A stretch of DNA of 63,092 nt, filler included, from Hyphochytrium catenoides (lineage: Eukaryota; Protista; Hyphochytriomycota): assembly GCA_900088475.1 (NCBI GenBank). It is 14 parts of 14 records of this genome, joined end to end, with 100 filler letters (N's around TTAATTAATTAA, not from the genome) between each part and the next. Parts side by side here need not be neighbours in the genome. Positions count along the whole stretch, not along the records: positions 9,513 to 24,062 come from FLMG01003162.1; 13 more parts are not named here. The stretch is one strand, 5' to 3'. Both the position numbers and the translations under genes were made by a program. This document shows, piece after piece, positions 18,931-21,321 of the stretch. Every line of letters begins with the position of its first letter. Position 1 is the stretch's first letter. The notes under the pieces are model-generated. The model was not told where the DNA came from. It did not search any database and worked only from the letters and a program-made list of their open reading frames with translations.

Positions 18931-21321
18931 ATGGGGATCCTTGCCTCTAATTCTCACCTGAAGAGAAGAGTTCGCTTCAATCCAGTTGACCATGGTCTCC
19001 CGAAGGACTTCGTCCTGACAGACTATTCAAAGGTTATAGCAGCGTCTATGAGCTTTGGTTCGGCCTGAAAACTCTGACTCTATCTGTGCTAGTTGAAAGG
19101 ATGAGGATGTAAGGTGCCCCAAGAAAAATTGCTCAAATACCTCGATCAGATCGGTAAGTAGCTCCCTTAAGGAGCTTCACTTTTTTGCCTCTTGCCATGC
19201 CCATCTTGAAGTGCGCTACTCCTATCTAGCACGTGCCTTCAATCTCTTGGCTCTTTCCTCTGCTTCCCCTGCGCTTCCCAGTTTCCTCCTGAAGCTGCAA
19301 AACCAGCTTTGCCGGCTCTGCCTGTGTGTTCGTCCGCTCTGGCAGAAGTACCTTTCTATTCTCTTCTCCTTCCCTTCCTGACGGTCCTGGAAGTAGCTTC
19401 GCCTCTGGAGTCTGGCAGTGCCTCTATCATGACCCAATCGCTTGACGTAGCTCGTTCCTCTCGATCTCTATAAAGGCCCTTCGGTTCTTCTGTCTCGGGC
19501 CCTAATTGAATCTCCATTTTTTCTTATCCTTCGGTGCTCCATGTAGCAAATGACCTGCGCCCAAACGAGACGCCGGGAATGGACAGCAGCGTCGTAAAGC
19601 TCCCTTATCCTGGTCTCTACCTCGTCTCCACCACGGACTTCTTCTATCCCCTGGTTGACGACCCTTACATCCAGGTATAGAATCTCCCCATCTTTTTGCC
19701 GTTCTCTTCTTCTTCCCCCCTCCTCTCTCTCGCTCTCGCTCTCTCTCTCGCTCTCGCTCTCTCGCTCTCTAGGTGTGGCTTGTCCTTTCCCTTCTCCTCA
19801 CTTTCCATGTCTGACTCTCGCCGTCTGCCTCTTCCAGGGACGCATTGGCTGTGCAAATGTCCTTTCAGACCTCTACGCAATGGGAATCCACAGCGTAGAC
19901 ACAATGCTGATGACTCTTGGAGTAAGTAGAGATATGGGACCAGAGGAACGAGACAGAGCGACTGCTATGATGATCAAGGGCTTCAATGACGCTGCGCGAG
20001 ATGCGGAAACGAACGTGACGGGAGGACAGACGGTGATGAATCCTTGGCCTATTATTGGTGGAGTGGCTATGAGCGTGAGGAAAGGTAAGCTCTTAGAAAG
20101 ATGCTTTACTTCCTCGCTCTCTCTCTCTCTCCCTATCTCTCCCTCTCTCTTCTGAGCTTATCCCGTTAAACTTTCTCTAAGAATATCTACTCATTAGATG
20201 AGGAAATAATACGGCCAGTTCACGCCGTTCCTGGCGATGTCCTTGTGTTGACGAAGCCTCTCGGGACTCAGGTGAGCACGGAAGAGATCGGGAGAGTTAG
20301 CCAAAGTGAGCGTCGCCTTGTGGCCTTCAACTAAGGAGTCTGTCCTTTCCTTGGCGCGGGCAGGTGGCAGTAAATGCCTATCAGTGGCTCAGGAAGCCTG
20401 AGTACTGGTCGCGCGTGGCCTCTGTTCTTACTGAGGCAGAAGCAGAAGAAGCCTTTGACACTGCAGTGGAGAGCATGTGTCGCCTGAACAGAAATGCAGC
20501 ACGGCTGTTGCACAAGGTACTGCCTTATCCTCTGTAAACATTCTGTTCCATGACTTGGGCTCCAATCTTTGCCTGTACTTCTAGCTCTTTCTCACCCTTT
20601 CCCTGCTGTTCTCAGTACAAAGCCCACGCGTCCACTGATGTCACCGGCTTCGGGCTTTACGGTCATCTGAGGTGAGAGACAAAGATATGGATTGCTAGCC
20701 TGAGTTGCCCAATGCTGAGCCCCAGTCTCTCTCCGTATTCCTCAGCAATCTCGTGCGGAGTCAGGTTCTCTCTCTTCGGATGGAGATACATACTATGCCC
20801 ATTATCAAGAACATGCCCAAGGTAAGGAAGACCTTCTTCCGTAGAAAGAACATGCTTCATGATAACACCTTTTTGGTTCAAGACCTCGCTTCATCCGGTA
20901 CACGGCCATCCCTCGTCCTTTCTACTCTCGTTAATCGGAGTTGCCTCTTGCCTCTCCTTTTGTACTCCTTGTCCTTTTCTCCCCCTTCAGTTGCTACTTT
21001 TCTGCTTTTGGTTCCTCGAGAAGCTTGCTTAGATAAACTTTTTTCTGCATCATTGTCTCTGGCTCAGTCAGGTTTCTCCTTCTCCTTGAACTCTTCTTGC
21101 AGGTGGACGCGGCAAGAGGAAATCCGTTCAAGCTTCTTCAAGGAAAGTCCACTGAGACATCAGGCGGACTCTTGGTTTGCATGCCTCGAGAGTATGTGGA
21201 AGAGTTCATTTCTGAACTAGAGAGAGAAGATGGGTATCCAGCTTGGATTGTAGGAGAGGTCTTTGCAGCGGAAGAGAAATCAGCCATTATAAGAGATGAT
21301 GTAAGAGTGATAGAGGTATAG
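18931..21321 (+). CDS. SEPHS2: Selenophosphate synthetase (SelD/SPS2), selenoprotein with Sec at codon 38; 9 exons, 371 aa
   Basis: Exons 18931-19032, 19093-19153, 19547-19674, 19838-20084, 20198-20271, 20364-20516, 20616-20671, 20746-20821 and 21103-21321, all GT-AG, total 1116 nt and in frame. Motifs: [86 protein letters not shown]. Confidence 0.96.

What the first reader, a model, noticed from the sequence alone, without database searches (positions are those of the whole stretch)
19093..19153. Hidden selenoprotein: in-frame TGA at the catalytic site of selenophosphate synthetase
Seen: exon 2 reads TTG AAA GGA TGA GGA TGT AAG GTG CCC (LKG*GCKVP), with TGA at 19102-19104. It is flanked by canonical splice sites and is in frame with 8 other exons. 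Known: this is the Sec/Cys position of SelD/SPS2 (UxxK). Inference: TGA is recoded as selenocysteine, so the organism has the Sec pathway. The ORF track misses exons 1-2 and most of exon 3, and standard gene callers would truncate the protein.
Basis: partly seen in the sequence, partly recalled or inferred. Interest (0 to 1): 0.75.

Follow-up and report, generated by a model that had tools for sequence, protein, structure and literature searches.

The report
Selenocysteine-coding selenophosphate synthetase gene of a protist
This is an ordinary nine-exon eukaryotic selenophosphate synthetase (SPS2/SelD) gene whose in-frame TGA sits at the catalytic residue and is almost certainly read as selenocysteine; that is the textbook state of this enzyme, seen here in a poorly annotated protist genome.

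Summary
TGA at 19102-19104 lies in a 61-base exon (19093-19153) and reads LKG*GCKVPQ. That exon is in frame with eight others, all with GT-AG borders (18931-21321, + strand).

Taken one at a time, the exons match human SPS1 and Leishmania SPS2 in order. Counting from the exon 1 alignment puts the TGA at the catalytic Cys46 of Leishmania SEPHS2. The lysine three residues later falls on Lys49.

About 200 bases after the TAG stop there is a type II SECIS hairpin (21523-21589). Rfam SECIS_1 matches it full length at 27.8 bits, below the cut-off of 35. It was the only hit of a SECIS descriptor in the 14.5-kb piece, and none of 300 shuffles gave an equal hit.

The same 61-Mb genome holds tRNA-Sec, PSTK, SepSecS and eEFSec. 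It also holds a SelW-like gene with TGA in its redox motif and its own SECIS. No second complete selD copy was found.

The genome is probably Hyphochytrium catenoides, whose genome paper already reported a tRNA-Sec.

Verdict: a real selenoprotein gene and a new member of a well-known kind. Interest is low.

The parts
18931..19032 (+). Exon 1 of SPS2/SelD (34 codons, starting at ATG 18931)
   Evidence: Residues 13-33 align to Leishmania major SEPHS2 (5l16) residues 21-41, E 0.08. The GT donor is at 19033.
19093..19153 (+). Exon 2, the glycine-rich catalytic loop; it carries the in-frame TGA
   Evidence: [21 protein letters not shown] acceptor at 19091-92, GTAAGT donor at 19154.
19102..19104 (+). 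TGA read as selenocysteine (catalytic residue)
   Evidence: Counting from the exon 1 alignment places it at Cys46 of LmSEPHS2 and the Lys at 19111-19113 at Lys49. Both are catalytic according to PMC7595633.
19547..19674 (+). Exon 3
   Evidence: Aligns to human SPS1 residues 64-98, E 2.9e-7. TIGR00476 profile positions 38-74.
19838..20084 (+). Exon 4 (AIRS N-terminal domain)
   Evidence: Human SPS1 residues 100-179, E 1e-27. Pfam PF00586, 38.4 bits. TIGR00476 and NF010705 selD, E about 1e-18.
20198..20271 (+). Exon 5
   Evidence: Human SPS1 residues 184-206, E 9e-6.
20364..20516 (+). Exon 6
   Evidence: Human SPS1 residues 208-256, E 6.5e-8.
20616..20671 (+). Exon 7 (18 codons plus 2 bases)
   Evidence: Read. 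TIGR00476 profile positions 215-234, E 9e-4 (C2377:11101-11160). Too short for the protein tools.
20746..20821 (+). Exon 8
   Evidence: Read, with GT-AG borders and matching phase. No family hit of its own. With exon 7 it fills the stretch of human SPS1 between residues 257 and 304.
21103..21321 (+). Exon 9 (AIRS C-terminal domain), stop TAG 21319-21321
   Evidence: Human SPS1 residues 305-375, E 4.7e-11. Pfam PF02769, 27.6 bits. NF010705 profile positions 283-345 of 345.
21523..21589 (+). Type II SECIS element in the 3'UTR. Helix I 21523-28 with 21584-89; ATGA 21532-35; helix II 21537-46 with 21567-76; unpaired AA 21549-50; mini-stem 21551-55 with 21561-65; GA 21578-79.
   Evidence: The minimum-energy fold has this shape, z -4.2. 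Rfam RF00031 matches full length at 27.8 bits, E 6e-4, when only the 3'UTR stretch is searched. It is the only descriptor hit in the piece on either strand, with 10/10 helix II pairs; 0 of 300 shuffles equalled it.

Best explanation
The locus is the single complete selenophosphate synthetase (SPS2/SelD) gene of a Sec-using protist, probably Hyphochytrium catenoides. It has nine exons and encodes about 371 residues. The UGA in exon 2 is not a stop. The SECIS hairpin in the 3'UTR recruits the Sec-decoding machinery (SBP2 or an equivalent, and eEFSec carrying Sec-tRNA(Sec)), so the ribosome inserts selenocysteine at the catalytic position of the glycine-rich N-terminal loop. There Sec, with the Lys three residues later, makes selenophosphate from selenide and ATP. 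Selenophosphate then feeds SepSecS to make more Sec-tRNA(Sec), so the enzyme depends on its own product. Shown here: the gene structure, the homology, the position of the TGA, the SECIS-like structure, and the machinery genes. Inferred: actual Sec insertion and enzyme activity.
For: TGA and frame. Nine GT-AG exons that follow human SPS1 in order: E3 64-98, E4 100-179, E5 184-206, E6 208-256, E9 305-375. Pfam AIRS and AIRS_C and selD equivalog profiles. Exon 1 aligns to LmSEPHS2 21-41, so the TGA is Cys46 and the Lys is Lys49, both catalytic. The spacing to exon 3 agrees with Leishmania within one residue. SECIS. tRNA-Sec scores 73.9 bits, over the cut-off, and ARAGORN calls it SeC with anticodon tca, followed by a run of T. 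SepSecS exons. eEFSec-specific domains III and IV, PF21208 at 95 bits and PF21131 at 38 bits. PSTK, TIGR03575 on two neighbouring exon pieces. A SelW-like gene reads CGG-TGA-GY and has a SECIS_1 match at 24.1 bits in its own 3'UTR. No other complete selD exists in the genome, so a working Sec system needs this gene. TGA closes 8 of 21 long open frames in the fetched loci of this genome, so it is not a general sense codon.
Against: There is no transcript, read or protein evidence, so neither the splice junctions nor the TGA are confirmed experimentally. The Rfam SECIS score is below the curated cut-off (27.8 against 35). It appeared only when the search was limited to the 3'UTR; the 4-kb search and the whole-genome search missed it. 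My SECIS descriptor was shaped after seeing the candidate. SBP2 could not be identified. Exon 2 itself could not be put through a homology search: it contains the stop, and its pieces are only 3 and 16 residues. The site assignment therefore rests on counting from the exon 1 alignment, which is itself weak (E 0.08).
Confidence: 0.92

Rival explanations
1. The TGA is a sequencing or assembly error, or a null allele of a Cys codon (TGC/TGT). The real enzyme would be the Cys form of SPS2, or this haplotype would be a pseudogene.
For: The assembly is a draft with many N gaps and looks heterozygous: a 95.5% partial copy of exon 4 sits at the end of another contig. Cys forms of SPS2 exist in trypanosomatids. 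No reads were available to check.
Against: The only defect in nine otherwise intact exons lies exactly on the Sec/Cys codon. A SECIS element lies in the 3'UTR of this very gene; a Cys-form gene has no reason to keep one. The genome keeps the whole Sec machinery and has no other complete selD.
Confidence: 0.04
2. Exon 2 is not part of the mature mRNA, through skipping or another splice choice. The TGA is then never translated, and the protein lacks the N-terminal loop or uses another exon.
For: The junctions are inferred from sequence alone. Intron 2 is long (393 bases) and could hide another exon. Human SPS1 has 11 more residues in this stretch.
Against: Exon 2 has a clean AG acceptor and a GTAAGT donor and keeps the frame. 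Its translation carries the catalytic loop (G-x-G-C-K-V-P-Q), which selD complementation in E. coli required in the trypanosomatid enzymes. The length between exon 1 and exon 3 matches Leishmania SEPHS2 within one residue. Skipping would shift the frame, because the exon has 61 bases.
Confidence: 0.03
3. TGA is reassigned to an ordinary amino acid throughout this genome, so the codon says nothing about selenium.
For: Some protists have variant nuclear codes.
Against: TGA closes 8 of 21 open frames of 200 codons or more in the fetched loci. It also ends the neighbouring uridine phosphorylase reading frame near the expected C-terminus. A dedicated tRNA-Sec and eEFSec exist. Both in-frame TGAs that were found sit on known Sec positions.
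Confidence: 0.01

Closest known systems
Eukaryotic SPS2 / SEPHS2 selenoprotein (for example mammalian SEPHS2), as surveyed in PMC4561486
   Same: Same AIRS and AIRS_C fold family. Same catalytic loop, with UGA at the catalytic position followed by G-C-K. SECIS in the 3'UTR. The gene occurs together with tRNA-Sec, PSTK, SepSecS and eEFSec. It has no fused extra domain.
   Different: The stretch between the catalytic loop and the first conserved Asp motif is 11 residues shorter than in human SPS1. The gene comes from a stramenopile lineage for which I found no published selenoprotein description.
Leishmania major / Trypanosoma brucei SEPHS2 (PDB 5L16; PMC7595633)
   Same: The N-terminal region aligns, and the spacing from the catalytic residue to the core domain agrees within one residue. 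The catalytic pair is at the same positions (46 and 49).
   Different: The trypanosomatid enzymes carry Cys at the catalytic site. This gene carries TGA (Sec) plus a SECIS.
Human SEPHS1 (PDB 3FD5, 9HJT)
   Same: It is the best-scoring solved relative for exons 3, 4, 5, 6 and 9, with most residues identical over exon 4.
   Different: From my own knowledge, SPS1 has Thr at the catalytic position and does not make selenophosphate. The gene here has the Sec codon, so it is the SPS2 type.

Membership tests
Selenophosphate synthetase (SelD/SPS2) | AIRS N-terminal and AIRS_C C-terminal domains, in that order | tested here: met
   PF00586 on exon 4 (38.4 bits, cut-off 24) and PF02769 on exon 9 (27.6 bits, cut-off 23.1).
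Selenophosphate synthetase (SelD/SPS2) | Best match is to selD-specific profiles and to solved SPS proteins, not to other AIRS-fold enzymes (ThiL, PurM, HypE) | tested here: met
   Exon 4 scores E about 1e-18 against NF010705 and TIGR00476 selD, against 6e-3 for thiL. In the PDB, all exons hit SPS1 or SPS2 first. Whole-protein cut-offs cannot be reached exon by exon.
Selenophosphate synthetase (SelD/SPS2) | Catalytic Sec/Cys and Lys in the glycine-rich N-terminal loop (U/C-G-C-K) | tested here: met
   reads LKG*GCK. Counting from the alignment gives positions 46 and 49 of LmSEPHS2, its catalytic Cys and Lys.
Selenophosphate synthetase (SelD/SPS2) | ATP-dependent synthesis of selenophosphate from selenide | not testable with these tools
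   Needs an enzyme assay or complementation of an E. coli selD mutant.
Eukaryotic selenoprotein gene (UGA recoded as Sec) | In-frame UGA at a position where homologues carry Cys or Sec | tested here: met
Eukaryotic selenoprotein gene (UGA recoded as Sec) | SECIS element in the 3'UTR (AUGA...AA...GA core on a two-helix hairpin) | tested here: met
   Located at 21523-21589. Fold. Rfam SECIS_1 full-length match at 27.8 bits, E 6e-4, below the curated 35 bits. Descriptor with shuffle control. A SelW-like gene of the same genome has the same architecture.
Eukaryotic selenoprotein gene (UGA recoded as Sec) | tRNA-Sec, PSTK, SepSecS and eEFSec present in the genome | tested here: met
   tRNA-Sec, PSTK, SepSecS, eEFSec.
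Eukaryotic selenoprotein gene (UGA recoded as Sec) | SECIS-binding protein SBP2 | tested here: inconclusive
   Five loci carry an L7Ae domain. That number is already accounted for by the usual ribosomal and snoRNP proteins, and none could be assigned to SBP2.
Eukaryotic selenoprotein gene (UGA recoded as Sec) | Selenium actually incorporated into the protein | not testable with these tools
   Needs 75Se labelling or mass spectrometry.

The most novel reading that the evidence does not exclude
If the genome is Hyphochytrium catenoides, this locus, together with the PSTK, SepSecS, eEFSec and SelW-like genes found here, would be the first description of a working selenocysteine system and of selenoproteins in the hyphochytrids. 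These are fungus-like stramenopiles. The genome paper recorded only a tRNA-Sec.
Probability: 0.4. Interest if true: 0.25.

Novelty: new member of a known kind. Interest (0 to 1): 0.17.

Why it matters
The main value is for annotation. Gene callers that treat TGA as a stop will truncate or miss this gene, and probably the other selenoprotein genes of this genome. It also fixes the organism as a Sec user and adds one point to the patchy map of selenium use among stramenopiles. It does not change what is known about SPS2 or about Sec decoding.

Tried and rejected
- **Rfam over 4 kb, and SECIS_1 over the whole genome:** neither reported a SECIS. The match appeared only when the 3'UTR stretch alone was searched, so those earlier blanks were filter losses.
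- **Covariance model from the candidate SECIS alone (R1):** it found only itself in the genome and missed the SelW SECIS. It is useless as a family model.
- **MAFFT alignment of the two SECIS elements:** it was not consistent with the structure, so I built no two-sequence model.
- **Identifying the organism by exact protein look-up:** this failed. The word search with the 440-residue neighbour gave only distant hits. The uridine phosphorylase neighbour gave oomycetes at 57-61%. The species proposal rests on the record count and size given in PMC5795050.
- **Scan of bacterial and archaeal genome contigs with exon 4:** it returned only a 1.2-kb eukaryote-type fragment that lacks the N-terminus, so no direct cross-species alignment of the Sec codon was obtained.
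- **Exon 2:** it could not be searched. It contains the stop, and its pieces are below the tools' minimum length.
- **Steps not run:** the exons were not joined into a spliced protein, so there was no full-length search, fold or tree.
- **Initial guess:** I first suspected a coccidian (Toxoplasma-like). I dropped that.
- **Human DNA:** the contig is not human.

Full report
**Observation**

The sequence shows an AG acceptor at 19091-19092, then TTG AAA GGA TGA GGA TGT AAG GTG CCC, and so on to 19153, then a GTAAGT donor. TGA is at 19102-19104. The frame reads [19 protein letters not shown].

**Gene model**

From I traced nine exons on the + strand:

| Exon | Coordinates |
|---|---|
| E1 | 18931-19032 |
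| E2 | 19093-19153 |
| E3 | 19547-19674 |
| E4 | 19838-20084 |
| E5 | 20198-20271 |
| E6 | 20364-20516 |
| E7 | 20616-20671 |
| E8 | 20746-20821 |
| E9 | 21103-21321 (stop TAG) |

All eight introns start with GT and end with AG, and the phases fit, giving about 371 codons. Every search was made exon by exon and by reference, so no full-length search, fold or tree exists.

**Homology**

- Exon 4 matches human SPS1 residues 100-179 at E 1e-27 and Leishmania SPS2 at E 2e-25.
- Exon 3 matches SPS1 64-98, exon 5 matches 184-206, exon 6 matches 208-256, and exon 9 matches 305-375. The exons therefore follow a complete SPS in order.
- Pfam finds AIRS on exon 4 and AIRS_C on exon 9.
- NCBIfam selD profiles beat thiL by 15 orders of magnitude.

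**Position of the TGA**

Exon 1 residues 13-33 align with Leishmania major SEPHS2 (5l16) residues 21-41 (weak, E 0.08, but it is the only hit). Counting on from there, the last codon of exon 1 is residue 42, L-K-G are 43-45, the TGA is 46, and the Lys of G-C-K is 49.

The trypanosomatid SEPHS2 paper names Cys46 and Lys49 as the conserved catalytic residues of the glycine-rich loop, and shows that Cys46Ala abolishes complementation (PMC7595633). The length from there to exon 3 agrees with Leishmania within one residue. Human SPS1 is 11 residues longer in this stretch. Exon 2 itself could not be searched, because it holds the stop and its two pieces are too short for the tools.

**SECIS**

- The 3'UTR folds into helix I, an internal loop with AUGA on the 5' side and GA on the 3' side, a 10-bp helix II, an unpaired AA, and a 5-bp mini-stem. 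This is the type II layout, with z -4.2 against shuffles.
- A simple descriptor (ATGA, one base, a 10-base arm, AA within 3 bases, an apical part of 8-30 bases, the complementary arm, one base, GA) hits the 14.5-kb piece once on both strands together. That hit is here, with 10/10 pairs. None of 300 Markov shuffles reached 10/10. The descriptor was shaped after I had seen the candidate, so this control is generous.
- Independent support comes from Rfam SECIS_1, which aligns to 21523-21589 over its whole length at 27.8 bits (E 6e-4; curated cut-off 35) when only the 3'UTR stretch is searched.
- Wider searches lost it to the filters.

**Sec system in the genome**

The piece is contig C2377 of a 61.0-Mb assembly of 4759 contigs. 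That assembly holds:

| Component | Evidence |
|---|---|
| tRNA-Sec | 73.9 bits, over the cut-off; ARAGORN calls SeC with anticodon tca; a run of T follows |
| SepSecS | exons found |
| eEFSec | eukaryote-specific domains III and IV |
| PSTK | TIGR03575 on two adjacent exon pieces |
| SBP2 | could not be singled out among five L7Ae loci |

A SelW-like gene on C562 reads CGG-TGA-GY. Its 3'UTR carries a hairpin of the same layout. That hairpin is the only descriptor hit in the locus, and Rfam SECIS_1 scores it at 24.1 bits.

There is no second complete selD. The only other hit is a 480-base, 95.5% identical fragment at the end of C2762, most simply a haplotype remnant.

TGA closes 8 of 21 long open frames in the fetched loci, so it is a normal stop elsewhere in this genome.

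**Organism**

- The neighbouring uridine phosphorylase is closest to oomycete proteins, at 57-61% identity.
- The record count (4759) and the other traits fit. This is an inference, not a proof.
- No paper in the library mentions both Hyphochytrium and selenoproteins.
- The contig is not human.

**Mechanism**

Shown here: an intact SPS2 gene, TGA on the catalytic codon, a SECIS-like hairpin in the 3'UTR, and the Sec machinery in the genome. Inferred from established knowledge of eukaryotic Sec decoding: the SECIS recruits SBP2 and eEFSec carrying Sec-tRNA(Sec), so that UGA is read as Sec. The enzyme then makes the selenophosphate that SepSecS needs.

**Rivals**

- A sequencing error or a null allele (0.04).
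- Exon 2 skipped (0.03). Skipping would shift the frame and remove the catalytic loop.
- Genome-wide reassignment of TGA (0.01).

**Comparison and verdict**

SPS2 is itself a selenoprotein in many Sec-using organisms, and it serves as the marker of the Sec trait across eukaryotes, with a scattered distribution in stramenopiles (PMC4561486). This gene is a plain, unfused, eukaryote-type SPS2. It is a correct catch, useful for annotation, a new member of a known kind, and of low interest.

Noticed in passing
G000:C562:89921-90154 (- strand); L024:1501-1734(-) with SECIS at L024:1208-1269(-): A SelW-like (Rdx family) selenoprotein gene with TGA in the CGG-TGA-GY redox motif and a type II SECIS in its 3'UTR. 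It is a second selenoprotein gene in the same genome.
   Followed up: partly
G000:C3870:123616-123701(-); C3127:14174-16900(+); C526:5766-7374(-); C3109:18833-19850(-): The Sec machinery genes of this genome: tRNA-Sec, eEFSec (domains III and IV), SepSecS and PSTK. SBP2 was not identified among five L7Ae-domain loci.
   Followed up: partly
L006:1406-1887 (= end of G000:C2762) against window 19741-20228: A 95.5% identical copy of intron 3, exon 4, intron 4 and the start of exon 5 of the selD gene sits at the very end of another contig, joined there through a CT repeat. It is probably an unmerged haplotype fragment of a heterozygous diploid, not a second gene.
   Followed up: partly
window 11702-13024 (+): A 440-codon single open frame with a signal-peptide-like start and repeated Cys-rich units (C-Y-P-K-C ... 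G-V-G-P-V-C-W). There are thousands of distant relatives at 35-50% identity, some fused to PAN, protease or metallophosphoesterase domains. Only a weak DUF6011 match was found, and the function is unknown.
   Followed up: partly
window 21956-22732 (- strand, interrupted by an N gap at 22599-22700): A uridine phosphorylase gene converging on the selD 3' end. It is 62% like the solved enzyme 6kd3, and its frame ends in TGA about 630 bases from the selD stop.
   Followed up: partly
window 10400-10560, 14300-18400, 19700-19770, 23000-23700: Very abundant CT/GA dinucleotide repeats in introns and between genes, several broken by N gaps. They produce long spurious SLSLSL/ERERER open frames on both strands.
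   Followed up: no
L031 (JAJBJC010000255.1, 1222 bases): A contig filed under the bacterial MAG 'Candidatus Anadelfobacter sociabilis' encodes a eukaryote-type SPS fragment 63% identical to exon 4 here. It is most likely DNA of the eukaryotic host that was binned with the symbiont.
   Followed up: partly
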